This document shows positions 13,301-48,600 of a DNA stretch of 64,000 nucleotides, piece after piece. Origin of the DNA: Haliotis rubra (taxonomy: Eukaryota); contig NW_025767293.1 in the NCBI RefSeq assembly GCF_003918875.1, positions 186,001 through 250,000 on the forward strand, read 5' to 3'. Below the pieces are notes generated by a model that was given only the letters and a program-made list of their open reading frames with translations, was not told the DNA's origin and did not search any database. The number at the start of each line of letters is the position of its first letter. Position 1 is the stretch's first letter. A program made the translations under genes and the position numbers.

Positions 13301-16300
13301 TGTCCTATAAGTGCCATCGCGTGGCGCGTAAAAAAAGAACTACGTCGCCCACGACGTCGCATAAAAAATACTAAGTCGACGACGTCGCCCGTTATTATTG
13401 TAGTCAAAGTATATTTTACAAAGCGACGTCGCGCAAGACGTCGTCTTTTTTTACGCGCCACGCGATGGCAATTATAGGACACCATAGATTCCTGTTTGCT
13501 TCATCGTTATCCTGATTCGGAAACAAGGAAAGCTAACTCAGGAGGACATGTGGTGGTGTGTGGTTCTGTGCACTAAGCCCAGGTCCCACATCAGTTGAAG
13601 TTAAGCAACGTTGGTCATGGAGAGTCCTTGGATGGATGACCATATCTGGCAGATTGACTCCTGAGAAGTTTTAGGACTTCAGTCCTGCCCCACAACGAAT
13701 CACATATGACACATGTGGTCTCACCTAGGCAAGTGAGTTTTTTAATAAATTGCCTCTGTCCACCAAGCAGTGAATGGGTACCCGGTGAGATAGGCCATAT
13801 GGCTGTTAACCTTCTTGCTCCTCACACGCTGCTTGGGTTATCCGGGGTAATAATGTATTACCGCCTTGGAAACAGGTGCTTTATAAATAACCATTATTAT
13901 CAATAATCATGAACATAACGTTGAAAACTTGGTTCTCATGACCATTATCACTCCGATGTTTGACATGTTGTCACACTTGTAACGTCAGAATGAATCATAA
14001 CATACATGTGGAATAACGGTCGTCTGACTCGTTACTGATTACTCTTCTGAGGTTTTGATGTTTACATTTAGAATCCCTTAAAACAAATATGTCAGAAAAT
14101 ATCAATATTAGAACCTACACTCTTCACATCGCTGACCTATCCATCCGTCTTTACATTGGTTGTTGCAGTTACCGGTGATGTGGTGACAGGTCCCTGGTTT
14201 ACATCCTCGGTTACACTTCTCAGTACAATCCTGTCCATAGGTACCCTCATCACAAGCTGCAGATGATAATGTGCATTTGTACATGTTAATGTTAATAAAC
14301 GGCAAAATACATTCTAGATAGACTAATAAATTTGGCTTCAAAGGACTACACACAAAAACACACACTCACAAACATACACACCCACTCACACCCACCCCAA
14401 ACCACCTCACTCACTAACCCACTCATCCACTCACCCACCCACACATCCACACACCCACTTACTCACTTACCACTCCACTCACACCACTGAACAACACCAT
14501 TTAAAATCCAATTCCAAAACAACCATTGACATGAAATGTGACTCGGACTTCATGCACCCACTCGCATCCACTCACAAACATCCACACCCACTCACATCCA
14601 TCCCCACCTCACTCACTCACTCACCTACCCACTCACTCACTCACACCACTGAACAACACCAGTTAAAATCAAATTCTAATACAACCATTAAGATGACATG
14701 TGACTCGGACTCCATGCACCACATGGAGTAATGGTAAATCCTCACTGTGTTCACAGGTGGGACCTGTCCATCCATCGTGACACTGGTTGTCACAGTCACC
14801 GGTGACGTGGTGGCAGGAACCTGGTTTACATCCTGTGCTACACATCCCTGTGCAGTCTTGTCCATACCTACCCTCATCACAAACTGCAGAGGAAAAATGT
14901 CACATCCCGTTGGAATTATCCTCGGTAATATTGTATTTGACCAATGTATAACATTTCATTATTGATATCATATTCATATATAATTGGTAGATTATGTTGT
15001 CAACAATAGCCAAATAGAACATGTGACGTAAACCCGACTGGCAAACCATTCACCAGAGTCCCTATACACAACGTGTTCAAGGCACAATATGGCTAATATT
15101 TTGCTGATGTACCTGAAAATATTACCTCACGCACCTAAACGATTCAGTGAACTGACGTCGAGTATAGCAGGTGTTTTGTGGCTTATATGGTTATATGACA
15201 ATGCTAGGTTAAAACTTAACTCACTCACTCACTGACTCGCGTGCGACATACTTGATGTGCAGTTGGTTCCTGTCCAGCCAGCTTTACATGCGCAGCTTCC
15301 GTCAGTAGCGTTACAGATTCCTCCCTGACACCCAGCTGCACACCCGGTACAGTTTTGTCCGTCCATGTAAAAGCCGTCCTTGCATTCTGGAAGTAGGAAG
15401 ACTGTTCCTGTGACCAGTTATAAGTTTTATCGACTTTATAAAGGTATAAAGTTATCTTGAACATAACAGGTAGAAACACTGACTACTTACAGTGAAGAGT
15501 TATGCATACAGATGGATACACTCATCGCATGCAGTGCACAGTAATACCAATAATAGATTGTAATACCAACTGCATTAAGGTATACCAACTGCAGCCCTGA
15601 TTATCTGTAGCGTTATAACACTAATTGCACGGTAAGGCATATGGATTCCAACACTAATTGAATTCAGTACTCAGTGAGGCATACGGATTTACACAAATCA
15701 GGTATGCGGATTCTGCCATCCATAACATGTAGGATACTGTAAGCAACACGCATTGATTGAATGTAGCTTACAGTATACGGATTGTAACACTGATAAAGTG
15801 CAGGGCACAGTAAAGAATACAGATTATAACACTGATTATGTGTACCCCACAGTAAGGTATAAGTATTGCAACACGGGTCACATGACAAATATCCTAAGAA
15901 TTTATAACTCATACAGAATGTACAAAATAACACGTTTGCAAATAAATATTACATTTCGACATAAATATGTAAATAAATGTAGACTTTACATACTGTGGCA
16001 GCCAGTTCCTGTCCAGCCAGCTCTACAGGTACAGTTGCCGTCTCCAGAGTCACACACGTCCCCCTCGCATCCACCACCACATTTCACACAACCGTGGTCG
16101 TTTCCGTAGAAGCCGTCCATGCATTCTTTAAACAAAGCCTTGTGTCGGATAACGACGGATAATCAGGTTGTTAAAATAAATAAAAGCGAAAAAACATGAA
16201 CATAATCATAAGATAAAGTCACCTGTACAATTTCGATTATCACCACGCTCTCTTTAAACAAAGGCTTATGTTAACGACTAATAATCAAAGTATTAAGAAA

Positions 16301-19300
16301 CAATCTTAAATGCAAGCGAACAGAAAAATGAACATAATCATGAGATAACGTCCACTGTACAATTTCGAATATAATCATGCTCTCTTTAGACTGACCAATC
16401 TTAGTTTACGTCATTTTTTATCATTTTAATATTTGTATATTTTCCTCGGACAAGTCTGCAAAACATATTCAGAAACACTGAGTACATTGCAGTAAGGAGG
16501 ATGGTAGGGACATGACTGATGTCCCTTAAAACGATGAAATGGCGTTCTAGCTACACTGCTTTTATTGTATGTTTAGAGGGATTGTTAACAAATTTCTATT
16601 TCTTCGTATTGCAGTGTTAAGCTACCTTAACAGCACTATTTAACACATAATTTTCGAGAAAGAAACATTTGAAGTAAATCAAATCAAACTTTGATTTTTT
16701 TTTATTTTATGCTTTGGTCAATCGTACCTATCGTGCACCCATGTCCAGCCCAGCCAGGTGCACAGCTGCAGCGGCCGTCAGCAGCGTCACATTCTCCACC
16801 GTCACATCCGTCTCCACACTCTGTACATGCCTCTCCTTCCGTATAGAACCCAGGTGGACAGGCTGATACACAAAGACTCTGTTGAATTCCATTTTGCAAA
16901 CTTGAAACCGCGGAATTTGAGATGCAATGTCGACTAAAGGATCCATTGAAAGAAATTAACTGGTGGATGATCAAATCAAACTTCCTATGCTGTCTGAGAA
17001 TTATATCATGTTGATTGCCTTCGTCATTCTATAAAACTAGTGAATTGATATTAGATTGTTTGTTTGTCTGTTTAACGCTGCACCCAATATTCCAGCTACT
17101 AGTATATGGCTATCAATAATCGAATCTGGACCAGACAGTCCAAATATTACGACAAGCACGATATTGGAAAGGTTGAAAAGGGAATCCAATTGCTATTATA
17201 CAGCTTATTTAGACAAAGGTGTTACAAAACCGGTGTGTAAAGGATGGAATGCAACGACGAATTGGTAGTAAACGTAGAACTAGTAAACCTTGGTTTGGCG
17301 CTGAATGTGAATTTAAAAAGAAAGTCAGGTGCAGGACTTTGAATAAATCCAAAAAAGATAAGGGACCCGTTTCCCTCCGCGAATACGTGCATGCTAGAAA
17401 TAGTATGATGCTAATTGTCAAGTTAAAAAAGAACAACATCATGAACACAAACTTCGCTTGTTAGAAGAGTCACTTGAAAATCCTGAACGTTTTGTGGAAG
17501 TAATAAAAAAGTTTAAAATCCAACTTTATAGAAAATACTATTCCAAGTCATGAGTGGTACGATCACTTCAAAACTTTATTTAATGTTTCATACCCTGAGA
17601 AAGAATATATTTGTAACATGTTCAGGCCTTCCTCTGATTTTATTATGGACACTGATGTTGAAGATGAAATAACAACTGATATTCTAGATGCACCAATTTC
17701 AGAAGTTGAAATAAGAGGAAGTATTCGACATCTGAAGAATGACAAATCTGCAGGAATAGACAATATTATACCAGAGTTTTTCAAGAACGCGGAAGATGTG
17801 CTTACACCTTACCTACTAGTAATATTTAACATTAAGCTCGAAAATGCAACCTTCCCAGAACCATTGGATGCTGGTATTATCATTCGGTGTAACTACTTAA
17901 ATGATGTGCAACTAAACTATTGCCTTTGTACGTGTTTGAGATTTTTGTCGTGATCGACTGATAAATTACTGTGCATTATAAACACTGAGTGATTCTCTTA
18001 AGGTTAAGCTACAGAATAGCGTTTTGTCATACGATAGATATGACAAAACCATTGTTTCAGTTCATATTCACGTCAGTAAAAATAGCTATAATGAGTGTGA
18101 GAATAGTCTGAAAATTGGCACTGTTATTAATTAAAGCAATTATGGCCACAACGGCATGATACCACCAAGTCGGCGACATATATATTATAAATGGCAACAC
18201 AAAAATACATACATATGTGGTTGCACTACTTATGACTAATAATTCTTTTTGTATTCAAACGTTGAGAATATAAATCATGAATGAAGGGCACATGAATAAA
18301 CTCTATTAGTGAGAAGACATAACTATGCATATGTTTTATGTGTGTGTGTGTGTGTTCGTGTGTGTGTGTGTGTGTGTGTTCGTGTGTTGGGGGAGGGGGG
18401 AGTGTTTAGTTTAAAAAAAAATTATTCACAAAGTGAAAAGGATCGAGGTCAAGTTCTTGCAACTTATAAAACCCCTCTCCAAAGATATTTATAATACCTA
18501 AATATTACATCACAAGCAATTATTAGAAACACAGACAGAGGAAGATTGACAGTTCAGGGTAAGTTATATGATACAAAAGATGTATAGAAAGAAGACTGAA
18601 GTGTGTGTGGGGGTGGGGGTGATAGCCATGGCTTTGTAGTTTATGGCTGATTTAATAGTTTATACATTGGTCCTACCCACAGCTTAAAGATCGTCCTTGA
18701 GTCAGTGAGATGGGACTGTGCTCATAAGAGTTCATTTACCCATTGCCATTTTATCAGAATGTAAACATCTAAAGCGCTATTGAATCTGATTAATATCTAG
18801 AGCATGCTGATGCTGCATCGAATGTATACACACAAAAAACAATCATGTCGAAACAAAGCCACATGGAGTCAGCTCAGTTTCCTTGCTGCCTGGCCGTTAT
18901 GAAAGGTTACCTAGCTGTGTCACCAGCATGTCACACTGTATGACATTCCTTAATGTAATATCGCCATTGAAAAAGGAGTCTTATTGGCTCATTTGTAAGT
19001 GCAAACATTGGATAATGTGAAGGCCTGGGGGAATAAAACTGTTAATTGTCACTGGCATATGTAGTACTGTAAATGTGTCTAGTATTCTGAAACACTTTCG
19101 AAACATATTAAAAGTGAAAATACGGGTTAGAGAGAATCTCCAGCAACCCATACTTGTAGGGATCGGCAGGTCAGGCTCGCTGACTTGGCTGACACATGTC
19201 CTCTTATCCCAATTGCCTATATCGATGGCACTGATATTAAGCACTGGATTGCCTGGTCCAGATTCTATTATTTACAAACCGACATCATACAGCTGGAATA

Positions 19301-20667
19301 TTGCTGAAGGCAGCGTTAAACAACAAACAAACTGATGACGCATATTCGAATATATGTAATATTTGGGCCACAAAATCCACATTAAGTTCATATATGTTAA
19401 GGGGCTTGAGGTTGGAACAAATATTACGGTTATTGTGAGTTATAAACAACATAATTCACCACGAAAGTCAATGTTGCTGAAAGACATTTTGAATCACTTG
19501 GCTGGGAGGGGGTTAAAAGCGGCCGACAATAGAATACTGTAGTCATCACTCTACAGAAGTAGCAAAGGTTTCAACATACTCAGTGTACAGTAGACTCCTA
19601 GCCAGCCAGGCCTACAGGTACATTGTCCGTCTTCGCTGCTGCAGCCACCATCACAGCCCTCACTGCATTGTCCACGGCAGTCAACCCCATAACTCCCAGT
19701 CTCACATTCTTGGAGCAATTAAAGAAACAATAGACAGTTTAATTAAAATATATACTATCACGATGTAAGGGTGTTATACCCTTTTATCAGTTGTTAAATG
19801 TTGCAATTCATTTCTGTTAAATATTCAATATACATGTTGTACACCCTTTTATCAGTTGTTAAATGTTATAATTCATTTCTGTTAAATATTCCATATACAT
19901 GTTGCACACCCCTTTTGTCAGTTGTTAAATATTGCAATTCATTTCTGTTAAATATTCAGTATATGTTGTACACCCCTGTTATCAGTTGTTAAATGTTATA
20001 ATGTCAATTAAGAAACAGTATGTGTCTCCCTGTAAACAGATATAACTGCAGATATGGAGTTAAAGTAATATCAACTCGCTCACTATGAAAATTTGATTAG
20101 ACTCAGGAACTAAAGCTTGTTTTGCTACATGGTGTATTTTTCATATTAGATATACATTTTCTAAAATACTTTACAGTTCCAGTTATACGTGTTCAATGGT
20201 CATAAACCTATGGCTATCAGAATTATCAAAAGCCTGTGGGTGAGTGAGTGAGTTGGGTTTTACGCCGTGTTTTGCAATATTCAAGCAATATCACGGCGGG
20301 GGAAAATAGAAAATGGCTTCACACATTTTATCCATGTAGGGAATCGAAGGCGGGCCTTCGGCCTGACGAGCGAACTCTTTAACAACTAGGCTACCTCATC
20401 CCCCTGTCAAGAGCATTGTAATACTTTCCAGATAAAGGCAGTATATGAGTATATTCCGTTATTATAGCATACGATAGTAACAATTATATTTTTAACTGCA
20501 ACAAAAAAGTACAATCGAAAAAGCATATGAGAAATACAACAGGAGAGATTGAGCATGAGAAATGCTTACACTGAATGATATAGTGGAGGGCAGTGGTGAA
20601 AGTATCACTTACCAGCGCTTGGCTTACACTGAAGCAAGAAAAACCAAAGTACAAAGAAGCAGTGCAT
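7254..20667 (-). CDS. Multi-EGF-repeat type I membrane receptor (MEGF10/Draper/SCARF-like ectodomain), 14 coding exons, about 594 aa
   Basis: Exons 20667-20613, 19708-19580, 16862-16728, 16125-15994, 15386-15252, 14883-14746, 14256-14119, 13145-13014, 12563-12429, 10655-10521, 10153-10016, 9803-9666, 8594-8480, 7383-7254. All junctions are GT-AG and phase compatible; total 1785 nt open to TAA. Confidence 0.88.
7863..8024 (-). mobile_element. SINE family A copy
   Basis: tRNA-like head, TSD ataactttact. Confidence 0.9.
8480..8594 (-). CDS. EGF gene exon 13 (stalk and transmembrane helix)
   Basis: tttttcacag| TELVEHEEQDIASPKLFFWVWIIIIVVLTFGFLACLN(R) |gtgaga; phase 1 to 2. Confidence 0.88.
8937..9185 (+). 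mobile_element. SINE family B, full length
   Basis: Conserved ~250-bp body ending gctggaatattgctgagtgtggtgtcaaactaaac(tcac)n. Confidence 0.9.
9666..9803 (-). CDS. EGF gene exon 12 (EGF-like module 11)
   Basis: CIDGTYGRNCSGLCSRGCTPGSCHHVTGDCNSQCKDGWTGPRCEE; 138 nt, phase 1-1. Confidence 0.92.
10016..10153 (-). CDS. EGF gene exon 11 (EGF-like module 10)
   Basis: CDAGTFGRDCAQKCNPGCKPGTCHHITGDCNYQCKDGWTGRRCEH; 138 nt, phase 1-1. Confidence 0.92.
10521..10655 (-). CDS. EGF gene exon 10 (EGF-like module 9)
   Basis: CNDGTYGHECTQTCTTCLPESCHHVTGDCDNQCQDGWNGQRCKQ; 135 nt, phase 1-1. Confidence 0.92.
10651..11200. repeat. 56-bp minisatellite, about 9 copies, overlapping the exon 10 acceptor
   Basis: Unit tgtgatacaagtgttcactgtaagcagtgcaaggtgcatcagaagccatggcactc. 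Confidence 0.95.
12429..12563 (-). CDS. EGF gene exon 9 (EGF-like module 8)
   Basis: CKDGFYMDGQNCTGCAAGCQGGICNATDGSCTCRVGWTGTNCTS; 135 nt, phase 1-1. Confidence 0.92.
13014..13145 (-). CDS. EGF gene exon 8 (EGF-like module 7)
   Basis: CGDGFYVDGDSCVDCGAGCVRETCNVANGSCSCRDGWTGSNCN; 132 nt, phase 1-1. Confidence 0.92.
13295..13487. mobile_element. Palindromic MITE
   Basis: About 45-bp TIRs ctatggtgtcctataa.tgccatcgcgtggcgcgtaaaaaaaga; apparent 4-bp TSD attc. Confidence 0.85.
13541..13905 (+). mobile_element. Old SINE containing a 5S-rRNA-like segment and an L2-like tail
   Basis: gaagttaagcaacgttgg...cttggatggatgacc resembles the 5S internal control region; central ctctgtccaccaagcagtgaatgggtacc; tail gtgctttataaataaccattattat. 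Confidence 0.6.
14119..14256 (-). CDS. EGF gene exon 7 (EGF-like module 6)
   Basis: CDEGTYGQDCTEKCNRGCKPGTCHHITGNCNNQCKDGWIGQRCEE; 138 nt, phase 1-1. Confidence 0.92.
14355..14722. repeat. (CACT/CACC)-rich tract with a two-copy duplication
   Basis: ctcacaccactgaacaacacca...atgtgactcggact.catgcacc at about 14478 and 14640. Confidence 0.8.
14746..14883 (-). CDS. EGF gene exon 6 (EGF-like module 5)
   Basis: CDEGRYGQDCTGMCSTGCKPGSCHHVTGDCDNQCHDGWTGPTCEH; 138 nt, phase 1-1. Confidence 0.92.
15252..15386 (-). CDS. EGF gene exon 5 (EGF-like module 4)
   Basis: CKDGFYMDGQNCTGCAAGCQGGICNATDGSCACKAGWTGTNCTS; 135 nt, phase 1-1. Confidence 0.92.
15994..16125 (-). CDS. EGF gene exon 4 (EGF-like module 3)
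   Basis: CMDGFYGNDHGCVKCGGGCEGDVCDSGDGNCTCRAGWTGTGCH; 132 nt, phase 1-1. Confidence 0.92.
16728..16862 (-). CDS. EGF gene exon 3 (EGF-like module 2)
   Basis: CPPGFYTEGEACTECGDGCDGGECDAADGRCSCAPGWAGHGCTI; 135 nt, phase 1-1. Confidence 0.92.
   Translation of the reverse strand, partial: PVHLGSIRKERHVQSVETDVTVENVTLLTAAAAVHLAGLDMGAR
17150..17885 (+). mobile_element. Degenerate LINE ORF2 fragment (pre-RT region), intronic and antisense to the gene
   Basis: KPWFGAEC and LDAPISEVEIRGSIRHLKNDKSAGIDNIIPEFFKN...YLLVIFN...FPE motifs, broken by frameshifts. Confidence 0.8.
19115..19331 (+). mobile_element. SINE family B copy (diverged)
   Basis: Aligns to the other B copies. Confidence 0.8.
19580..19708 (-). 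CDS. EGF gene exon 2 (EGF-like module 1)
   Basis: CETGSYGVDCRGQCSEGCDGGCSSEDGQCTCRPGWLGVYCTL; 129 nt, phase 1-1. Confidence 0.9.
19775..20002. repeat. About 65-bp tandem repeat, about 3.5 copies
   Basis: Unit acccttttatcagttgttaaatgttgcaattcatttctgttaaatattc... Confidence 0.9.
20241..20404 (-). mobile_element. SINE family A copy
   Basis: Aligns to the other A copies. Confidence 0.85.
20613..20667 (-). CDS. EGF gene exon 1 (signal peptide)
   Basis: ATG at 20667; MHCFFVLWFFLLQCKPSA then G|gtaagt, phase 1. Confidence 0.82.
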
Positions 20668-26645: not shown

Positions 26646-27897
26646 GTAAGCAAACGCATTGCCAACATGGTTACACTACCACCGAGAAGGGACCATTGGC
26701 AACACGCCCTGACAAACAGTCGGGTTAGATGAACATTAGGTAGACTGTTTTCACGATTCTTTGTGAATAGACCACCTATATTAAACATGTTTGATTAAAG
26801 TGTCAATAGACGAAATACAATACTAAACGATAACATTTTAAAGATGTATAAACAAATTCTGGGTATGAGACAAAATGGTGATCAGTGATACTACTTCCTA
26901 AATGGGTGATCGAAAGTCCCATTGATAATTGATATAACATCCGCTACTCAACCATCCAATTTATCCAGACAGTAAACACCGCCACCATTTTAGCGACACC
27001 GATTCTCAACCAGACAATTGCGAAGTTAATAGTAAAAGAAACACAAAAGAAGTAAGAAAAACACCTTTTCGTCCATACTAACTTGCTTGTTGCTCTCTTG
27101 CCTTAATGCTCATTGTTATTCAGTAGATAAAGCGTTCTCTCCTCACGATAAAGACCCGGGTTCGATTCCCCATATGAGAACAATGTGTGAAGCCCTCTGG
27201 TGGCCTCGGACTTGATATTGCTGGCATATTGCTAAAAACGACGTAATGTAATACTCACCCACTCGTTATGCGATTCAAAGAACAAAACCGTTGAATGCAA
27301 AAAGCAGTTTTATTTTCTGCCAGCAGCATAACACTATATAACCTCGGTACCATAACTAGAGCATCAAATAGCAATCAAGAGCTTTTATATATAGAAAAAT
27401 ATACATCAAACATATAAAGACACATATAGCTAACAATACTTCTGCACTATCTCTATTCTGCGGTGCGTATGGAGATGCAGCGATTCATTGTGCCGGCTGC
27501 ATCTCATAAACATGCATAGGTGTTCACCTTAAAGAGGTGTCAAACGCACAAACTCACTACTATCAGTGCAAATTAAAATCATGCAAAGAAATATTTCGAA
27601 ATATCTAGTTATCTGAAAGATGTAAACATTGGAATTATACTTATTTCTAATCTTTGAAGTTTGGCATATATCTCACTAACTCAGCGACTTAAAGTACATA
27701 AGACAATGTAGGATACCTATTTGTCTAGGTTTGTCATACATAGCGTGTATCGTAAACAGGGTAACTCAACACATGGTTTTTTTTATTGATAAAACAGTTT
27801 GTAAAAATATTTACATCTTTAGTCATGAAATACCAAGAAACAATTGAACTATCTACACACGTTTGTCGGAACATGTTCTTTTGATCCCGACAGGATG

Positions 27898-28474
27898 TAG
27901 GAACATTAAATCAAACAAGGAAGATTGACTGAACATTGTATCCACAACCCATAAAAACTCAAGAGTGTCATTTGTTATTAAAATATGCAACTGGTTAATA
28001 ATCACTTTATTTGCATAATGGACGCTTCCACGTTATATACGATCCCGACCCCAAGGTTTCTGTTGATAATGTCATGTAACGTGAATTTGTTAATTAACGG
28101 TATTTTGGAAAGTTATATTTTCTGTTACGCTTAACGATAATCCTGGAACATCACACTTAGATACATAAAAGGAAGGAATATGAAACATTCAGCTCTAGAG
28201 TGCAATCACTCTTAGTTATCTAGAACCCGTGAAGGTCCGGGTTAGATTGAACCTTCAGTAACCAATGCTTGTCGTAAGAGGCGACTAACGGGATCGGGTG
28301 GTCAGGCTCGCTGGCTTGGTTGACACATGTCATCGGTTCCCAATTGTGCAGATCGATGTTCATCCTGTTGATCACTGGATTGTCTGGTCCAGACTCGATT
28401 ATTTACAGACCGCCGCCATATAGCTGGAATATTGCTAAGTGCGGCGTAAAACTCAACTCACTCACTCACTCACT
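27898..28474. repeat. About 570-bp direct duplication, copy 1; includes SINE B at 28226-28474
   Basis: Matches 31431-32000; this SINE retains its TSD tagttatctaga. Confidence 0.92.
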
Positions 28475-28641
28475 AGTTATCTAGATATTCCATAAACAAA
28501 CTAGCGATGAAACTTGCATGGATCACATAAAGTCTGTGATGGCACTGGGTGTTCTCTGAAAGAGTAAACTGTGCCCTTTGGGATGCTTAATGTCCAGATG
28601 TAATCAAGTGTTAACTGGTATATGCACCCTTGTTTGTTGAA

Positions 28642-30646
28642 TTAAATATCATCTTCTGAAGATGCAGGATCTGGTTTCTTTGGCGATGGTTGGCCTGGTA
28701 ACCTCATTGCAAGTTTTTCCTGGAGTTGCTTCGTTACTTGTGAAAACGCCATGAAATTGACTGGAGTAGGACCAGATTTGGGTATTGCTTTGGTTTGTGT
28801 GGTGAGTTTGGAATCTTTTCGTGGTGGTGGAGGTGGTGGACCGCCTTTGCCTGCTGGTTTCAGTGATGAGGAAGTTGGCCGTTGACCAGAATTTTGATAG
28901 TCCCCATCAAAGGTCTGTAGATCGTCACTAGATGTGGAGCCTCGGCAGCTAGATGAGGAGCCTCGGTGGCTAGATGAGGAGCCTCGGCGGCTAGATGAGG
29001 AACCTCGACTATCTGAAAATGTGCTATCTCTGTCACCAAACCTATGATCAGCTAGCTTTGACCTGATAGGCTGTGGTGATATCTCGGGTGGTCCATGGCA
29101 GGCCTGTTTTGGCAGTGGTGGTAGTGGACGTTTCTGTATTGGTATCGTTTCATTTGAAGACATTTCATTTTGACGACCAGAACTGCACAAGGAAGTAAGG
29201 GATGGGTATTCTTTCACATCAGGTGGGTCTGATGGTTTATCCGTTTCTCTTAAGTTTCCAGGACTCTTGGTTAATTTTGGTATTGGAGGGAAAGAAGGCA
29301 GTTTGGGAACTGTTGATACCTCTTCATTTTCAGCACCCTTTTCCTTCATTCCAAGCAGTTTCTCCTTATTTTCATAGGTATCCGACAATCTCGGGATTGG
29401 TGGAAAAGATAAATCATCAACCTTAGGTTCTCTTTGACGTGAACGACGAGCATCCGAGAGGTTCCGCGAAAGATGACTGGTTTTGGCTTTTAGTGGCAGT
29501 CGTGGAAGTGTAGATGGTCCGGATGGTTGCATTTGACCACGAGTATAAGAGAACTGCCTTTTCTGGGACTCCATTTCAATACTTGTCAGTTCATCATATT
29601 CTGAAGACTGTGATGTTGTAGAAGCACGCCCAAAGTGAGCATCATGTGTTTTGGTAGTTTCGTTTGATGCTGGATGTAACTCGAGCAAGTTTCTTGAAAG
29701 AGGCAAGGTTTTCGTTTTAGGCAAGAGTGATACAGTGGATTTTCCTGCTGACCCCGGCAGATCACAGTCATCAAGAGATTCCTTATTATTCTTTGAGGAA
29801 AAATTATCACTGATCATATCAATGATGTTTTGAGACATTTCCTGGATATTTGGCACACCACTTTCCAATATGGGATGGGTAACGTCCTCTTCGGGTATGA
29901 ACATCCCTTCTGTTTCCATGGAAACAACTGAGCCAGCAGATGCGTACACGGACCCAAAGTCCGCATCTGCTGCGGGTGGCATGTCGAGCCAGGATTTTCT
30001 GAAAAGTGTAGACATTGCAGATTGACGTGAATTCGCATCTAATGATTCTCGAAGGATAACATCATCTCCCTCTTCCGGAGTAACTCGTGTGAGGACAATA
30101 TCCATGTTTTCGTCTTCATCAGGTACGAATGTGTCTGTTTTCTTAGTGTTGGAAAGGTACGCCATCTTGCTGGTTTCGAAAGTAGATACTGTGCTGTCTC
30201 CCCTGCTGTCGTCTACATGAACGTAATCATTTGTTAGATTTGAACTGACACTTCCACGTGCCAGGGCTCCTTTGTAGTTAGATTTAAAACGATTATCGCT
30301 TTTACGCCATCCACGACCGAGTTTCTTCAGTAGGATTCCGCTCAATGTTGAACATTTCTTTGGGGGTTGAGGGGGTTGAGGCCTACCAGTTACTGCAAAT
30401 TCTGTTACTGCTTTAATAGATTCTTCAGAAGATGCTGCACCACAAGAATCATTTGACACAGGCCTTTGTGCACCTAAATACTCATACGAATGACCGTCAC
30501 TCTCATTTGATGATGTGTCTGAGTTGCTTTCGCTTCTCTTCTGCTTTCTTAAGGGTACAGCATCACCCTGGTTCTCGTAGATTGCAGCAATGTCCAATAT
30601 GCTGAAGGACAGGTCATTCAGCCTTTGGTCTCGTTTGCAGCGTCTC
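28642..30646 (-). CDS. Adaptor A terminal exon (cytoplasmic tail)
   Basis: 2-kb uninterrupted ORF; acceptor ccttttcaaag; motifs YENQ, YEYL, YVHV, YDEL, YENK, YQNS, RPLPPLP, PPPPPPRK. Confidence 0.92.
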
Positions 30647-33060
30647 CTTTGAAAAGGTTGAAACAAGTCATATCAAGAAAGGTACCAACTATGTAAAATA
30701 GTTTTTTCTTTATACAGGATATACTATAACATACAAATTCAAAACATTTGTACAGATATACCAATAGAAGTATATACACACCGCGGTTCAAAGGCTACAA
30801 GGTGCTTTTAAGCTATGATTTTGAGAGACAGCTGTCTGGACTCGGTGATAAGAGTACTAGTATATGTGTGAGACATTTCACGAATCAAACAACACACTTT
30901 TGTGAAAATCACCACATAAAAGAGAAGCTAATCAATTACTTGTATGTTGTCACAGCGAATGTTCTCAGCAGTTTTCGTCTTGACAGGACGTCCAGTGAAC
31001 AATTTTAAAACAATTATTCAGTATTCTTTGGATCAAATTGTTCCTTTCTTGTGAGAATATATCTACTTCCTGTATAAAATGACAAGCTATTTGTACTTAC
31101 TTGGTAAACAACAGGATAGCCCATACGAGGAGGAGAAGCAGGATATATACGCCTATGAACCCCAGCGATATATATTCTGGAAAAGGAGTAAATAAAAAGG
31201 TACATGTGACATTTTGTAGAAACAACTAGCTACGTTAGAATCGGCCCTAATTTAATCAGATATACCTACTGGTTATACAAGGTTCGGTTGCATTTACATG
31301 ATTCTGAAAAAGGATTGGGTTTCTTTAAAACATATTTCAATCACCAGCTCTACTTTGTTAAAAAAATTCTGAAAAATCGAAATTGTGAAAACATTATTGA
31401 ATTCATTTGATGCTGAGTGCTGACAGGTTATAGGAACATTAAATCAAACAAGGAAGATTGACTGAACATTGTATCCACAACCCATAAAAACTCAAGAGTG
31501 TCATTTGTTATTAAAATATGCAACTGGTTAATAATCACTTTATTTGCATAATGGACGCTTCCACGTTATATACGATGGCGACCCCAAGGTTTCTGTTGAT
31601 AATGTCATGTAACGCGAATTTGTTAATTAACGGTATTTTGGAAAGTTATATTTTCTGTTACGCTTAACGATAATCCTGGAGCATCACACTTAGATACATA
31701 AAAGGAAGGAATATGAAACATTCAGCTCTAGAGTGCAATCACTCTTAGTTATCTAGAACCCGTGAAAGTCCGTGTTAGAATTGCTCTTTAGTAACCCATG
31801 CTTGTCGTAAGAGGCGACTAATAGGATCGGGTGGTCAGGCTCGCTGACTTGGCTGACACACGTCATCGGTTCCCAATTGCGTAGATCGATGCTCATGCTG
31901 TTGATCACTGGATTGTCTGGTCCAGACTCAATTATTTACAGACCTCCGCCATATAGCCGGGATATTGCTGAGTGCGGCGTAAAACTAAACTCACTCACTC
32001 TGACTAAGAGGGAATGTCCCGACTCATGAAACGTTAGATATATTCAAATGTACAACTTCCGGTTGTGGCATTTCGTCAAGGACAGTATTCCAGTTTTATC
32101 AAGGAGTGTCAGCATGATGTGTGAATGATGCATTTCTCTTATTTAACACTTCGGTGAATCCCATAAGTAAGTCATATGATGCTATGACAACATATACGAC
32201 TGAGCGAACTCCCACTCATGTTAAGTATCGTTAACACAAGCTGCAACATGTCATATCGATTGAGTACGGGTACGATACTATGATGCTATACATCGAGTGA
32301 CGACGTCAATGAGGAGACGTGTGTATGGCTGCCCAGGGTGGTCGCACTCACCATTGATGACGTGTCCCCTGTCTCATGTCTTATTATATGACTCTTTATG
32401 CACTTTTTGAATGAAATCTAATTTGTGTAATTTTTAATTTTGACCCCTGGACCCTTTCTAGGTACCGATCCACAAGGCGTATGAAGCGTTACGACCTGTG
32501 GTAATTCTATGGTGTATCATAGACTTCCGAATGTCGTAGCGTTCAGGACCCAGCATTACAAAGAATTTTCAGTCAAATTGTTGGAAAATGATTTCTGTTT
32601 GTAAAATAATTATCATAAATCTCACAAACATCTTTGTTTCTATTTTTTCGGTCAAGTGAGGTCGGTGATAACTTTCTTTTGCCCGGTAGCTTAGTAACTG
32701 TAACTTGAAAACGGTAAAAACACACACTACCAAACCTCTGCAACAATGTAACCTTGTCATCAACAGCTATGACACTCAGAAAATGAATAATTCGACTCGA
32801 ACTTGAGCTATCATTAATATGAATTTACGATTCAAACATATACAGCAAAACGAAATCCCATACATGTTTAGTATCGTAAAACAATTTGCAACATGTCACT
32901 TCACCTATGAGCAAAGTCATATAGATTGCTTTTCCATGATTCATATTTGGGCAACCATCAGCCCAAGTCTAATGCGAGGCATTAAGTTTGTCTAGTATAT
33001 TAAATAAGAACTCTACATACCCGGTCTCATGTCTTTAAAGGACCATCCGTCCCAAGACAT
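28642..33060 (-). CDS. Single-pass membrane protein with a tiny ectodomain and a long Tyr/Pro-motif tail (transmembrane-adaptor-like, adaptor A), 3 coding exons, about 706 aa
   Basis: Exon 33060-33021 MSWDGWSFKDMRP, G|gtatgt, with an in-frame TAG two codons upstream of the ATG. Exon 31176-31101 (E)YISLGFIGVYILLLLLVWAILLFT(K)|gtaagt. Exon 30646-28642 is the 674-aa ORF from RRCKR onward. Phases 1 and 2 are compatible. Confidence 0.85.
31101..31176 (-). CDS. Adaptor A transmembrane exon
   Basis: ccttttccag|...|gtaagt, 76 nt, hydrophobic stretch of about 23 aa. Confidence 0.88.
31431..32000. repeat. About 570-bp direct duplication, copy 2; includes SINE B at 31759-32000
   Basis: Matches 27898-28474; no TSD after this SINE. 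Confidence 0.92.
33021..33060 (-). CDS. Adaptor A first coding exon
   Basis: 40 nt, ATG with an upstream in-frame stop, phase-1 donor gtatgt. Confidence 0.7.
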
Positions 33061-33444
33061 CCTCTAGTCATCTTTACTTGGGCCGAGTGTTACTCAACCC
33101 TGTGTTAAACATACTTTCTGCTGTGATTATTTATTTCCCTCTTTACATTACAGTTAACGTTCCTATTCCGCTTAACAGGGAAATAAAGCATCAACGATAA
33201 GGAATGTTGTAGACTGAATTCATGTTTACAATGAGTGTGGACTTTATAAAATGTTAAACATAACCAACGTCTTCAGCAATTAAGTTCAATTTTACCTGCA
33301 CCGTTTTGTTTAAAAAATGAGGTATATTATACAAGGCCTGTGAACTGTTAATAGTACGGCAACATCTAATATGGTATTTCTTTCATTAAAGTGAGAAATG
33401 GTGAAGAGGTTTGATTTTGTAAAGGAAGATAGTTTTCAAAGTTT

Positions 33445-40480: not shown

Positions 40481-41874
40481 GAATTTGTAACGCGCCAATC
40501 TCACGCCAGCTGGTATGCTCATGGCGCTACAAGTAAAGTTATTTCTTGCTTTTGTTTTAAGTTTTACGTTGTTTGTGATAGTATATGCCGTATGTATTCA
40601 TTTCTTATTCCAGTAAAGACAAGTGTCACGGATGTTCAAGATTTGCATCAGCCTTTCCATCAGATATCGCTACCTTCTACAGGCAAAACTCTTGGGTGGA
40701 CTGTGACCACGAGTACGAGCGTATAAGCTTACAGGACAGGTCCCGGGAGAAAGACACTGTATGCAGCAGTCTACAACCGCATCATGAGGCGCGTCCGGGT
40801 GGGGAGAAAGGAGAAGACTATATAGATCCCCGAGCTTCATCATCAACAGAACATGTCGTAGATGATGTTAGGATATCCAGGTTATCCCATCTTCTGAGAA
40901 CATCGTTCTGGAGTAAAACCAACTCTGAGGAGGTTTTAGAATCTGACCACATACCAACATGTGGAAGCAGCGGGCAAAGGAGAACTCGAAGCTGCCGCAA
41001 GGTGAAGTCAACTGATATTTGTTCGAATACTCTCACTGCGGGGCATTTCATACCAGACTCGGGGGAGATTCGTGCACGGGGACTACCATCCGGAACAGCA
41101 GAAACAATGCCGGATGTCACAGACAGCATGGTTGACATTTTTCAAGAAATCTTCAATCCTTCCAACAACACTCTTAGAAGCCTGCTTCTCAGAACAATTC
41201 ACCCCGCAACTGAAAAAAATAAAAGTCTATCCAAACGTCTCTCTAAGTCTGAGACAGATGTCACCATTGCCAAAACATTCAGATCGTTCGGCAATACAGA
41301 CTACGATCCCTCTACAGACCCACAAATACAAAGTGGCGATGATGACCATTATGTCGCTGTCTCCGATATCAGAGTAACGCCTATACCAAAACGACGAAAA
41401 TCATTGTCCCGGAAGAAACACATCCTTGATGATAAGCAAACGGAAAACGAGTCTGAGCTCAGAAAATTGCCCGGCAGAAGTTTAATTAAATATATTACAA
41501 TCCCCATGTTCGAGGAAAGAAGAGAAGCAAGTATGCCTGTTCCGAGATCCAAACCCATGAGCCCCAGGCAGTGTCAACCAAGCAGCATCTTCAAGACTTC
41601 CTCTGACAAGAAAGGAGGTGGTGAATCTCCCACAAATCGTATGATAGAGGAACACGTACAAGCACCTGCGATGCATCTTGACACCTATGAAAATGAAATC
41701 CTAAGTGGAGTAGGCAGTCAAGAGAATCCGCAAAGCTTTCATGGATCCTTCAGGCGGAGTGTGCAAAAAGCAAGAAATGCTACATGTCTAGACGGACAAG
41801 CAAAAACAGGAAAAGAATATTCGAACGTAAGGATGGTCGTGAAGAATTTGTCATGCTCAATCGAAAACATTTGA
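40197..41874 (+). CDS. Transmembrane-adaptor-like protein (adaptor B), paralog of adaptor A, about 449 aa; 5' exon uncertain
   Basis: Exon 40197-40284 (x)NNIIIAWTIAGIGMALACFFLLLYLCLK(C), acceptor ttttcatttccag, donor gtaagt. Exon 40614-41874, acceptor tttcttattccag, in frame with the 429-aa ORF. Confidence 0.85.
40614..41874 (+). CDS. Adaptor B terminal exon (cytoplasmic tail)
   Basis: 1.26-kb ORF; motifs YERI, YIDP, YVAV, IKYITI, YENE, YSNV. Confidence 0.9.
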
Positions 41875-45640: not shown

Positions 45641-48600
45641 CAGTAGTAGTAGTTATTTGCTTTATCTAACGTCGCACGCACAACTAAGGTATTTCGGCGA
45701 CGGGGTAGTACACTTATTAAGAAATGAGGGGGAACAAAATATAGAAATTTTGAAAGAGTGGTGTTACTACCCCAAAAAGATTGTATTAGTGTTTGTTGAA
45801 TTTGGTAGAGTGGATAATGTTTTCCTATTCATTGCAAGTTATAATTGAATTTATCTATTATTGTGTTGTTAACTTTATTTGTTAGGTCTGTTTTGGAGTT
45901 AGGTATTTCTATTTTGTTTGGCAGCTTGTTCTGCCATTTCGTTGCCATGGGCTCCGATATGTGACGAGACCCAGATAAAATGTACTTGATTATTTTTATT
46001 TTGGTGGTATAGTATTCTTCTGTATATGTTATTGATTAGATCTAGTCTTTTTGTTGTAGAGTAATTTTTGAGAGCTTGTATGGAGCTTAAGGAATCCGTT
46101 AAAAAATGCAGATGGTAGTGCTTGTTTGTTTGCAAATCCTGAACTATGGCTGCGAGTTCTTCTGTGAAGATACTGGAGTTTGCTGGGAGATTATAGGATT
46201 GTTTCTGGCTTTTTTTGGATTTGTAGATACCAAAACCAGTATTATCATTTTGGTCCTTGGATCCGTCAGTATAGATGTAAAGATTATCTTGTGGATTGTA
46301 ATTTTGTTGTATGAATTCTTGCACTGTGAATTTATTAAGTATATAGTTTTCAGTAAGTTTTGTGTTGGCCAATATTTTTGGCAGTAATGCTGGAGGAAGA
46401 GATTTGTAATATGGGTTTGTATTATATTCTGTTGTATATAAATCAAGTTGTTGTTTCATTTCCTGTATTTTTTGTCCAAAAGGTTTTGGGTATTTGCCTT
46501 TATTGATAATGATTTTATTTTTATTTTTAAGAGATGTATAGTAGTTTTCAGTTTTGTTTGTAATGGGGTTGTTAAGGGATCAGTTACATATTTCATTGTA
46601 CATCTTTCCCATTGGAGAGTGAGGTCTAGTTCCCCGCATTCTACCAATAATGCTTGGAGGGATGTACCTGGGAAGGCCCCAGTTTTACATTTAAGTGCTT
46701 GGAATTGAATGAAACTGAGTTTGTTTATATGTGTTTGTGCCATATCTTGAAATATTTCGCAGCCATAGACTAATTGAGATTTGATGAGTGATTTATATAG
46801 TAATAGTAATGTTTGTTTGTTGCTAACCTATTTACTTTGTGATGAGTATTTAATAATGTTGAGCTCTGACTTGCATTATTCTTGTATGAATTGAATGTGT
46901 TTGTTCCATGTTAAGTGCTGGTCAAGGATTAGACCTAGAAATTTTACTGTATCTGATTGCTGTAACTTTTGTTTGTTAATATAAAGATGTACATTTTGTT
47001 TTCTTCGATGTTGTGCTTTGAATACTACAGTTGTTGTTTTAGTGGTAGAGAGTTGGAACCTTCATTGGTTGGCCCAGTTTTCAATATGGTTAAGTGTAGC
47101 TTGAATTTGTTTTTGTGTATATTTTTTCATTTTTCATTAACCCATATTGCTCCATCGTCGGGAAACTGGGATTTGTTTATGTTTTCACTGAGTTTGTTGA
47201 ATATATCATCAACCATAACATTGAAGAGAGTGGGTGAGATGATACTTCCCTAGAGTGTGCCATTTTCTAGTGTACATTAAACGCCAAAAGAAACGTTACC
47301 CCCCTTCCTGAATGACGTAGCTACCTATCTTCAACTGGTGTTGTGATGCGTGGACGTCCTCTTCTTGGTCTGTCTACGGGGACCCCAGTCTGTCTGAAGC
47401 CCTGACTCAGTTTTATATAACCGTGATACGACCCCGCCTGCGCCATTACAATGGCTCGTTTTCTCTCTTCAGCTGTTAATCGGGGCACAGTTCTCTTACT
47501 TGTGTATAATATCATGCATTCTAGGCTCTCTTTATAACCTATATAATCATTCTACATGTGAAATGGAAGCAAATACTGCTTAAATATTGCTGCGTTTTGG
47601 CGATTGATCATTGCTATGTATTAACAGAAAATGGAAAAATGTTACTTTGCAAGCAAAAAGTTTAACAAAGATAATTGTAGATGTTCCCAAACATTTGTTC
47701 ACAATATGAAAGACACGTTTTACTTGTTTTCACAATTGCAATTCAGCAGAAAATGTTTTAAAAGACTGAAATCATAGGAATGATTATTTTACATTTTACA
47801 CACTCTGCAACAGTTGTTTCTTGTTTAAATACATTGTAGTTGAAAAACGGTGACTTTAAAAGGGTTAATCTTTGTCTCAACGCGGAATTTTATTTAAACC
47901 TTTCTTTTGGACATCTAAATCACTGTTATTAGTTTATTTCGGCATGGACGAAAATAGGACAATTTAACTCTTCTGAAAAAGATGTATTTCACCTAAATAT
48001 GAATGCATTTGAGAAATTTTTTCGTGATTTGCATAAAGCTGTGTTTATAAGCTTTCTTGCAAACTAATACCTTCTTAAATATATTTGATAGTTTTTAAGT
48101 AATTCATAATTGTAGGAGGGTAACGTTTCTTTTGGCATTTTGTGTATAGTTTTGCGTCTATGGAGACTTTAAAGTCTCTGCCTGTTAGAAAGGCTGATAC
48201 ACAATTTAGAAGTGCCCCTTTTAAACCATCTTTTGTACTTTTTGGATGACACCCCCTCTCCGGAGCATATCAAAGGCCTTGGGGAAATCCAAAAAGACTG
48301 CAAATGTGTATTTTTTGTATTTTGTGCAGTTCTGATTTAGTTATGGATTTGTGCTAGATGATCTATGGTGGAGCGATGTTTGAGGAAGCCTGATTGAGTT
48401 ATTGTGTAAGGCGGTTGTTAACCATACCCTCCATGGTTTTGCATATGTTAGATGTAAGAGATATTGGCCGATATGATTCGGCTTTGTTTACGTCTTGGCC
48501 TTGTTTGTGTACGGGTATGATAAGGGAGTGTTTCCAGGCTTTTGGTATTTGACCGTTTATCCAAGCTGTATTATAAAGTTTTAGTAGTTGGTTTATTAAT

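What the first reader, a model, noticed from the sequence alone, without database searches (positions are those of the whole stretch)
28642..33060. Adaptor A: three YxN sites, an ITIM-like site and textbook SH3 ligands
Seen: YENQ, YENK and YQNS (Grb2-SH2 consensus YxN); SEYDEL (fits ITIM S/I/V/LxYxxL); YEYL and YVHV; RPLPPLP (canonical class I Src-family SH3 ligand); PPPPPPRK, FPPIPR/FPPIPK and PPQPPQPPKK; a possible C-terminal amphipathic helix FSQVTKQLQEKLAMR. The predicted extracellular part is only about 14 aa. Inference: a scaffold recruiting a Src-family kinase and Grb2.
Basis: partly seen in the sequence, partly recalled or inferred. Interest (0 to 1): 0.75.

Follow-up and report, generated by a model that had tools for sequence, protein, structure and literature searches.

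The report
Abalone-only membrane scaffold with docking motifs
This is a real, transcribed abalone gene for a membrane protein with almost no outside part and a long floppy inside tail carrying conserved docking motifs, so it looks like a signalling scaffold, but it has no relatives outside abalones and its binding partners are only guessed from short motifs.

Summary
A three-exon gene on the minus strand (33060-33021, 31176-31101, 30646-28642) translates exactly to RefSeq "uncharacterized protein LOC124255109" of Haliotis rubra, 706 aa.

Probable RNA contigs tile the exons and skip the intron. dN/dS is 0.24-0.34. Only the membrane helix folds; the roughly 670-aa tail is disordered, with conservation in short islands.

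- The ATG at 33060 is H. rubra-specific. The start shared by all three species is at 33030, leaving about 4 outside residues.
- YENK and the second Tyr of YEYL are not conserved.
- The ITIM-like match is no more than chance.
- FPPIP x2 fits the Ena/VASP EVH1 motif at least as well as an SH3 ligand.
- The most constrained blocks (residues 133-181 and 671-692) carry no recognised motif.

An exhaustive profile search, word searches and Pfam find relatives only in H. asinina and H. rufescens. It belongs to none of the PAG, LAT, LIME, SCIMP, UL135 or A36R families.

Best reading: a genus-restricted, LAT/PAG-like membrane scaffold built from short linear motifs. Src-SH3 plus Grb2 docking is plausible but untested. 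The scan had noted this same stretch before, including as a pair with the neighbouring gene.

The parts
33021..33060 (-). Coding part of exon 1. H. rubra-specific ATG at 33060; GT donor follows 33021.
   Evidence: the joined CDS equals P0001; this ATG is not usable in H. asinina (in-frame TGA after it) or H. rufescens (ACG).
33028..33030 (-). Start codon conserved in all three species (residue M11 of the RefSeq model).
33027..33071 (-). Upstream ORF of 14 codons, open in all three species. Its TGA overlaps the conserved main ATG (ATGA).
   Evidence: Whether it is translated was not tested.
31101..31176 (-). Exon 2, encoding the transmembrane helix (residues about 15-37).
   Evidence: AF2 helix 13-48, with mean pLDDT 85 and 75 for residue blocks 21-30 and 31-40. 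Cover in run X2 equals the exon length.
28642..30646 (-). Exon 3, encoding the whole cytoplasmic tail (residues 39-706) plus the stop at 28644-28642.
   Evidence: Probable RNA contigs tile 28441-30645. dN/dS 0.24-0.34.
30637..30639 (-). Cys42, five residues after the helix within KRRC, invariant. Candidate palmitoylation site.
   Evidence: Acylation is inferred, not tested.
30568..30579 (-). Y62 YxN site (YENQ; YQNE in H. rufescens). It is preceded by the invariant island at residues 50-60, with Ile or Val at position -1.
30475..30486 (-). Y93 YExL site behind an acidic, Ser-rich run. The second Tyr is not conserved.
30220..30366 (-). Basic and hydrophobic block, residues 133-181, ending in NDYV (Y180). 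One of the two most constrained parts of the tail (dN/dS about 0.11). No known motif assigned.
29785..29856 (-). Invariant island at residues 303-326 with a weakly predicted helix (306-318).
29587..29604 (-). SEYDEL (SGYDEL in H. rufescens). ITIM-like by pattern, with a YDEL core.
   Evidence: The pattern count is at chance level.
29389..29406 (-). FPPIPR, the first [FWYL]PxPhiP (EVH1-type) motif, invariant.
   Evidence: PMC8789275.
29275..29292 (-). FPPIPK, the second EVH1-type motif, invariant.
29197..29208 (-). YPSL, conserved in all three species (YPxL / YxxPhi type).
29110..29130 (-). RPLPPLP, a class I SH3 ligand. It lies inside a 13-residue invariant island in an otherwise fast-evolving stretch.
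   Evidence: PMC4140816.
28927..29007 (-). 21-nt tandem repeat encoding RGSSSS-x units. Copy number differs between species (about 4, 3 and 1).
28888..28899 (-). Y622 YQN site, conserved, in the most constrained C-terminal part.
28816..28839 (-). PPPPPPRK. Fits class II SH3 (PxxPxR) and Px[PA]xPR, and is a six-proline run.
28687..28752 (-). Longest invariant run (22 aa, residues 671-692), with a weakly predicted amphipathic helix at 672-684.
28645..28656 (-). Conserved C-terminus, EDD followed by I or V. Possible PDZ-type ligand.
   Evidence: This is inference only.

Best explanation
The gene encodes a Haliotis-restricted single-pass membrane protein. Its N-terminus faces outward with only 4-14 residues. 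Its tail of about 670 residues is intrinsically disordered and cytoplasmic. The tail works as a membrane-anchored scaffold made of short linear motifs.

Shown here: the gene model, its transcription, purifying selection, the disorder, and the island-like conservation of the motifs.

Inferred mechanism:
1. The basic KRRCKR flank fixes the tail on the cytoplasmic side.
2. Cys42 may be palmitoylated.
3. An SH3 protein, most likely a Src-family kinase, docks on RPLPPLP. Such docking also opens the kinase.
4. The kinase then phosphorylates conserved tyrosines. Y62 has the Ile or Val at -1 that Src kinases favour.
5. The two conserved pYxN sites (Y62, Y622) recruit Grb2/Drk.
6. In parallel, and independent of phosphotyrosine, the two FPPIP motifs, the six-proline run, the basic block at 133-181 and the C-terminal helix bind further partners. 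Candidates are Ena/VASP, profilin or CIN85-type SH3 proteins, and acidic lipids or calmodulin.

My odds: a real gene with this architecture, about 0.95. A motif-based membrane scaffold of some kind, about 0.55. Specifically a Src-SH3 plus Grb2-SH2 adaptor, about 0.3.
For: - Exact match to the RefSeq model.
- Three small runs, probably RNA, cover exon 3 up to its 5' edge at 30645, with zero depth in intron bin 30755-30951. The DNA run has 60-70x there.
- One contig carries 21 further letters that match the depth seen in the exon 2 bin. Cover in X2 over the exon 2 bins equals 48 + 28 = 76 nt, the exon length (the arithmetic is mine).
- dN/dS is 0.24-0.34. Five of six within-species differences are synonymous.
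- AF2 shows only the TM helix as confident, with pLDDT below 50 for 652 of 706 residues. The Atlas model has pLDDT 0.41.
- Invariant runs of 10 or more residues: 11 observed against 2.7 expected.
- YxN and PxxP-type motifs exceed shuffles and are conserved.
- RPLPPLP is the VSL12 core, which binds the Src, Fyn, Hck and Lyn SH3 domains.
- The language-model neighbours share one architecture: UL135 0.90, LIME1/PAG 0.82, A36R 0.81, SCIMP 0.77. These are leads only.
Against: - No binding, phosphorylation or acylation data exist.
- Only three congeneric sequences are available, so conservation discriminates weakly. Tyr is 71% conserved against 64% overall.
- Short motifs are common by chance: 4,994 EVH1-type matches occur in the human proteome.
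- The Atlas scores lie in the range that shuffled proteins sometimes reach.
- The most constrained blocks have no assigned ligand.
- There is a single juxtamembrane Cys, not the CxxC of LAT or PAG.
- The tissue of expression is unknown.
Confidence: 0.5

Rival explanations
1. An actin-regulatory membrane scaffold that does not depend on phosphotyrosine. The two FPPIP motifs recruit Ena/VASP through EVH1. The six-proline run recruits profilin or CIN85/Abi-type SH3 proteins. The invariant C-terminal helix binds an actin-related partner. The result is actin assembly at a membrane, in the manner of HCMV UL135 or the zyxin/ActA type of Ena/VASP recruiters.
For: - Both FPPIP motifs are invariant and fit [FWYL]PxPhiP.
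- PPPPPPRK fits Px[PA]xPR, and the segment it shares with the C-terminal helix (about residues 600-690) is among the most constrained in the tail, dN/dS 0.09-0.15.
- The best language-model neighbour is UL135, at 0.90. UL135 binds Abi-1 and CIN85/CD2AP through motifs (PMC7411667).
Against: - The EVH1 core motif is very frequent by chance.
- The motifs have basic flanks (R or K after FPPIP) rather than the acidic flanks that strengthen EVH1 binding. That preference is reported, citing Niebuhr 1997.
- Pfam finds no WH2 or other actin-binding domain even at E up to 10.
- The UL135 score lies within the chance range stated.
Confidence: 0.2
2. An accessory or trafficking subunit. The membrane helix pairs with another membrane protein, such as a receptor, a channel, or the neighbouring EGF-repeat receptor tyrosine phosphatase. 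The tail supplies sorting signals (YxxPhi sites, YPSL, acidic clusters) and regulatory Ser phosphorylation, rather than assembling an SH2/SH3 signalling complex.
For: - Four conserved YxxPhi sites in the tail, including YPSL.
- The tail is Ser-rich (104 Ser), with RKDS and RGSSSS units.
- The TM segment is well conserved.
- The gene order with the receptor phosphatase is kept in H. asinina and the window. The H. rufescens flank held no called downstream gene.
Against: - The YxxPhi count is not significantly above shuffles (4 against 1.7, P = 0.08).
- There is no charged residue in the TM helix of the kind that usually mediates pairing with a receptor.
- Adjacency of genes in animal genomes rarely indicates a shared function (general knowledge).
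- This reading does not explain the invariant RPLPPLP and FPPIP motifs.
Confidence: 0.15
3. The motif matches are coincidental features of a young, fast-evolving disordered protein. Its function, if any, is unrelated to SH2, SH3 or EVH1 recognition.
For: - No relatives outside the genus in 1.84 billion representative proteins or in the word searches.
- No Pfam domain.
- The ITIM-like pattern is at chance, and one YxN is species-specific.
Against: - Purifying selection, dN/dS 0.24-0.34.
- Significant clustering of invariant residues into islands, several of which coincide exactly with the motifs.
- YxN and PxxPx[RK] counts exceed shuffles.
- The gene is transcribed.
Confidence: 0.15

Closest known systems
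Vertebrate transmembrane adaptor proteins (PAG/Cbp, LAT, NTAL/LAT2, LIME, SCIMP)
   Same: - A very short ectodomain; PAG has 16 aa (PMC2213442 abstract).
- One TM helix and a cysteine next to the membrane.
- A long disordered tail with YxN-type tyrosines and proline-rich SH3 ligands.
- A conserved C-terminus that could be a PDZ ligand, as in PAG (the PAG detail is from my own knowledge).
- LIME1/PAG and SCIMP clusters appear among the language-model neighbours.
   Different: - No sequence homology: Pfam PAG, LAT, LIME1 and SCIMP models do not match even at E up to 10, and HMMER finds nothing.
- One Cys rather than CxxC.
- The tail is about twice as long and Tyr-poor (12 Tyr).
- It contains large conserved blocks without Tyr or Pro motifs.
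- It occurs in a mollusc genus rather than in vertebrate leukocytes.
HCMV UL135 (PF25733)
   Same: - A membrane-anchored, disordered protein that works through SH3-binding motifs for Abi-1 and CIN85/CD2AP (PMC7411667).
- It is the best language-model neighbour, at 0.90.
- The abalone protein also has a Px[PA]xPR match.
   Different: - No Pfam match.
- 706 aa against about 308 aa.
- The 0.90 score with 163 shared features is below the level typical of true family members.
- It is a cellular gene with introns, conserved in synteny in three abalone genomes.
Vaccinia A36R (PF05950)
   Same: A short ectodomain, a TM anchor and a disordered tail. Its phosphotyrosines recruit Nck and Grb2 to drive actin assembly (from my own knowledge). 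It appears among the neighbours at 0.81.
   Different: No Pfam match, and the score is below the level at which it counts as more than a lead.
Ena/VASP recruiters with repeated FP4 motifs (ActA, zyxin, LPP)
   Same: Two invariant copies of a motif that fits [FWYL]PxPhiP.
   Different: - The copies are about 33 residues apart, against the 5 or 15 enriched among strong binders.
- The flanks are basic rather than acidic.
- There is no LIM or other domain.

Membership tests
Transmembrane adaptor proteins (functional class: LAT, PAG, NTAL, LIME, SCIMP) | Very short extracellular N-terminus and a single TM helix, with the tail in the cytoplasm | tested here: met
   4-14 residues precede a 23-residue hydrophobic helix. 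The C-side flank is KRRCKRDQR, which by the positive-inside rule places the tail inside; that step is inference. AF2 helix 13-48.
Transmembrane adaptor proteins (functional class: LAT, PAG, NTAL, LIME, SCIMP) | Juxtamembrane CxxC palmitoylation motif | tested here: inconclusive
   A single invariant Cys42 lies five residues after the helix, but there is no CxxC. Acylation cannot be tested here.
Transmembrane adaptor proteins (functional class: LAT, PAG, NTAL, LIME, SCIMP) | Several conserved tyrosine motifs for SH2 proteins in a disordered tail | tested here: met
   Eight of 12 tail tyrosines are invariant, including two YxN sites. YxN is enriched over shuffles, P about 0.01. The tail is disordered. 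The comparison is only three species deep.
Transmembrane adaptor proteins (functional class: LAT, PAG, NTAL, LIME, SCIMP) | Tyrosines are phosphorylated by Src or Syk kinases and then bind SH2 proteins | not testable with these tools
   This needs phosphoproteomics and binding assays.
PAG (PF15347), LAT, LIME1 (PF15332), SCIMP (PF15050) as homologous families | Significant sequence match to the family model | tested here: not met
   hmmscan of the three orthologues and of three fragments at E up to 10 lists none of these families. The exhaustive profile search finds only Haliotis proteins.
UL135 (PF25733) and Orthopox A36R (PF05950) | Significant sequence match to the family model | tested here: not met
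   No match at E up to 10. There is only language-model proximity, 0.90 and 0.81.
ITIM-bearing inhibitory receptors | The pattern [S/I/V/L]xYxx[I/V/L] in the tail of a receptor that has a ligand-binding ectodomain | tested here: not met
   The pattern occurs once and is conserved, but that is at chance frequency: 1 against 0.52, P = 0.41. There is no ectodomain.
Class I SH3 ligand (Src-family type) | RxxPxxP, ideally RPLPPLP | tested here: met
   The exact heptad is invariant in all three species and is identical to the core of VSL12. Binding was not tested.
Ena/VASP EVH1 ligand | [FWYL]PxPhiP, strengthened by acidic flanks or trailing prolines | tested here: inconclusive
   The core is met twice. 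The flanks are basic, not acidic, and there are no trailing prolines.

The most novel reading that the evidence does not exclude
A mollusc lineage invented a LAT/PAG-type transmembrane adaptor independently of vertebrates. It would form part of a small conserved locus: a second ectodomain-less Tyr-motif protein lies head-to-head upstream, and an EGF-repeat receptor tyrosine phosphatase lies downstream. Together they would act as a lineage-specific phosphotyrosine signalling module.
Probability: 0.2. Interest if true: 0.6.

Novelty: new member of a known kind. Interest (0 to 1): 0.35.

Why it matters
Transmembrane adaptors of the LAT/PAG type are known from vertebrate immune cells. It is not known how invertebrate Src, Csk and Grb2 modules are organised at membranes without them; a full-text search found no paper on such adaptors in molluscs.

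A genus-restricted protein with the same architecture and conserved SH3 and YxN motifs would be an example of convergent evolution of a scaffold from short linear motifs. It would also give abalone immunology and cell biology a concrete, testable candidate.

As it stands, this is an annotated but uncharacterised gene with a motif-level hypothesis. It is a useful lead rather than a surprise.

Tried and rejected
- Homology searches. A word search with exon 3, a word search restricted to the best-conserved region 124-330 at E up to 10, and the exhaustive HMMER profile search of 1.84 billion representatives found nothing outside Haliotis.
- Pfam on the whole proteins and on fragments at E up to 10. 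The only result is a sub-threshold Vpu match over the TM segment (20.3 bits against a cut-off of 24), which I take as TM-helix similarity.
- Atlas searches with the C-terminal part and the central block gave no usable hits.
- AF2 gave no fold to search with, so no fold search was run.
- Paralogy with the head-to-head neighbour at 40585-41874. BLASTP gave E = 0.033 and profile-profile comparison gave E = 0.14. Only a collinear membrane-proximal resemblance remains (Cys, then DIAxxY, then H-x-YE). This is not significant, so common origin is left open.
- WH2 reading of the C-terminal helix: rejected for lack of any Pfam signal and of an LKKV-like element.
- Strict LYPxL (ALIX) reading of YPSL: position -1 is E or D, so it does not fit (the strict pattern is from memory).
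- Splice joints from read laying: the joint table was swamped by SINE copies at 28.2-28.5 kb and 31.7-32.0 kb. The exon borders therefore rest on contig ends, on depth arithmetic and on the match to RefSeq.
- A citation for FPPIP in ActA could not be retrieved from the held texts, so that point is not used.
Full report
**What is there**

The window is eukaryotic, about 38-44% GC, with scattered repeats. On the minus strand a 674-codon open frame runs from 30666 to 28642. Reading the sequence upstream, I joined three exons:
- 33060-33021, ATG to a GT donor.
- 31176-31101, AG acceptor to GT donor.
- 30646-28642, AG acceptor to stop.

The result is a 2121-nt CDS. Its translation is identical to protein P0001, "uncharacterized protein LOC124255109 [Haliotis rubra]", 706 aa.

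**Is it expressed and selected?**

Three small runs (about 50 Mb of contigs each, probably RNA) tile exon 3 from 28441 to 30645. They have zero depth in the intron bin 30755-30951, where a DNA run of the same species has 60-70x.

One contig ends at 30645 with 21 unplaced letters. The depth in the exon 2 bin (0.48 x 197 / 4.47) corresponds to 21 nt.

In a second run, the cover in the two bins that hold exon 2 corresponds to 48 + 28 = 76 nt, exactly the exon length. That run also has cover in the exon 1 bin (the arithmetic is mine).

The joint table was swamped by SINE copies, so I could not read the junctions directly.

Between the three Haliotis orthologues dN/dS over exon 3 is 0.24-0.34. Five of six within-species differences in the CDS are synonymous. 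This is a real protein-coding gene under purifying selection.

**Architecture**

AlphaFold2 on the three-sequence alignment gives one confident element, the helix at 13-48. Helices at 306-318 and 672-684 are weak, and 652 of 706 residues have pLDDT below 50. The Atlas model agrees, with pLDDT 0.41.

The hydrophobic core (residues 15-37) is followed by KRRCKRDQR. By the positive-inside rule the long tail is cytoplasmic and the N-terminus faces out. This is an inference, not shown.

**The start codon**

The ATG at 33060 is preceded by an in-frame stop two codons upstream, so the frame cannot be extended within that exon. It is not conserved, however. H. asinina has a TGA five codons after it, and H. 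rufescens has ACG there.

All three species share the ATG at 33030-33028, residue M11. The outside part is therefore 14 aa at most and about 4 aa in the conserved form.

A 14-codon upstream ORF (33071-33027) is open in all three species. It ends in a TGA that overlaps the conserved ATG.

**The motifs**

Against 5000 shuffles of the tail:
- YxN: 3 against 0.47, P about 0.01.
- PxxPx[RK]: 5 against 0.72, P about 0.001.
- [RK]xxPxxP: 3 against 0.72, P about 0.03.
- ITIM-like pattern: 1 against 0.52, not above chance.

Conserved in all three species: Y62 (YxN), Y93 (YExL), Y180 (NDYV), Y389 (YDEL), Y519 (YPSL), Y622 (YQN), RPLPPLP, both FPPIP, PPPPPPRK, the 22-residue C-terminal island, and the last residues EDD followed by I or V.

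Not conserved: YENK, which is YESK in H. asinina and FENK in H. rufescens, and the second Tyr of YEYL.

Tyrosines as a class are not better conserved than other residues (71% against 64%). The tail has only 12 of them.

**Pattern of constraint**

Invariant residues cluster into islands. There are 11 runs of at least 10 residues against 2.7 expected, and 7 runs of at least 13 against 0.7. This is the signature of a disordered protein that works through short linear motifs.

RPLPPLP lies in a 13-residue invariant island inside a stretch where dN/dS is about 1, which argues that it is functional.

The lowest dN/dS values are elsewhere:
- Residues 124-213 (0.11-0.16): a basic and hydrophobic block ending at Y180.
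- Residues 598-687 (0.09-0.15): YQN, the polyproline run and the C-terminal helix.

Several other long islands carry neither Tyr nor Pro motifs (193-201, 212-224, 283-293, 303-326, 349-359).

**What the motifs could bind**

- RPLPPLP is the core of VSL12. That phage-display peptide binds the SH3 domains of Src, Fyn, Hck and Lyn with similar affinity and activates the kinases by SH3 displacement (PMC4140816).
- YxN is the Grb2 SH2 preference (established knowledge).
- Y62 has Ile or Val at -1, which Src-family kinases favour (my knowledge).
- The two FPPIP copies fit the Ena/VASP EVH1 motif [FWYL]PxPhiP (PMC8789275) better than either SH3 class. That core motif is very common, with 4,994 human instances, and the flanks here are basic rather than acidic.
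- PPPPPPRK fits class II SH3 and the Px[PA]xPR pattern of CIN85/CD2AP (the pattern is from my knowledge).

None of these interactions was or could be tested here.

**Relatives**

Only H. asinina (86% identity over the alignment) and H. rufescens (73%) have detectable homologues:
- Word search with the exon.
- Word search with the best-conserved region at E up to 10.
- Exhaustive HMMER profile search of 1.84 billion representatives.

Pfam finds no family at E up to 10, and that includes PAG, LAT, LIME1, SCIMP, UL135 and A36R.

The language-model search puts the protein next to clusters that share its architecture:
- HCMV UL135, 0.90.
- Semaphorin-6A, 0.87 (a 409-aa cluster with no common Pfam family).
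- LIME1/PAG, 0.82.
- Vaccinia A36R, 0.81.
- SCIMP, 0.77.

These scores lie in the range that shuffled sequences sometimes reach. I use them only as a statement about what the protein resembles, not as kinship.

**Locus**

Gene order is largely kept across the three species:
- A second gene lies head-to-head upstream (large exon 40585-41874, plus strand). It is present in all three genomes.
- A receptor-type tyrosine phosphatase lies downstream on the same strand as the adaptor. It has EGF-laminin repeats and two phosphatase domains.
- The phosphatase was called in the H. asinina locus. Its EGF exons are visible in the window below about 19.7 kb. In the H. rufescens flank no downstream gene was called.

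The two adaptor-like proteins are not demonstrably paralogous: BLASTP E = 0.033 and hhalign E = 0.14. What aligns is the membrane-proximal segment: Cys, then DIAxxY, then H-x-YE.

**Verdict**

The protein has the build of a LAT/PAG-type transmembrane adaptor and carries a conserved, textbook Src-type SH3 ligand and two conserved YxN sites. Against that:
- It belongs to no known adaptor family.
- Its partners are untested.
- EVH1 and polyproline ligands suggest a cytoskeletal side.
- The most constrained blocks are unexplained.

I rate it a new, genus-restricted member of the functional class of motif-based membrane scaffolds. Interest is moderate to low until binding or phosphorylation data exist.

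A full-text search found no paper on transmembrane adaptors in molluscs.

Noticed in passing
window 33027-33071 (-): A 14-codon upstream ORF is open in H. rubra, H. asinina and H. rufescens. Its TGA stop overlaps the conserved main start codon (ATGA), an arrangement typical of termination-reinitiation control.
   Followed up: partly
window about 9600-19720 (-); L002:22045-23779: The downstream neighbour on the same strand is a receptor-type tyrosine phosphatase, called in H. asinina with EGF_laminin and two Y_phosphatase domains. Its EGF-repeat exons are visible in the window as Cys-rich ORFs at 19551-19718, 16702-16974, 14108-14365, 12352-12543, 9963-10214 and 9613-9882.
   Followed up: partly
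window 40585-41874 (+): The head-to-head neighbour has a 429-codon exon and is present in all three abalone genomes. It shares with the adaptor only a weak, collinear membrane-proximal resemblance (Cys, DIAxxY, H-x-YE), with hhalign E = 0.14.
   Followed up: partly
window 27716-28474 and 31441-32000: The same composite repeat (SINE-like, very high depth in all runs) lies both just downstream of the stop codon and in intron 1. Further copies occur at about 1.5, 9.0, 19.2, 42.6, 52.8, 57.0 and 60.1 kb. They swamped the joint table of read laying.
   Followed up: no
window 28927-29007 (-): An in-frame 21-nt tandem repeat encodes RGSSSS-x units. Copy number differs between species (about 4 in H. 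rubra, 3 in H. asinina, 1 in H. rufescens).
   Followed up: partly
window 30308: A C>A difference is seen in the DNA run X5 and in one probable RNA run. It would change the otherwise invariant Trp152 to Leu inside the most constrained basic block. It is the only non-synonymous one of six differences seen.
   Followed up: partly
window 17618-17953 (+), 45899-46459 (-), 48716-49379 (-): ORFs that look like fragments of retroelements, by eye from their translations: a reverse-transcriptase-like stretch, an RNase H-like stretch, and a Lys-rich ORF in an A-rich region with strong skew.
   Followed up: no
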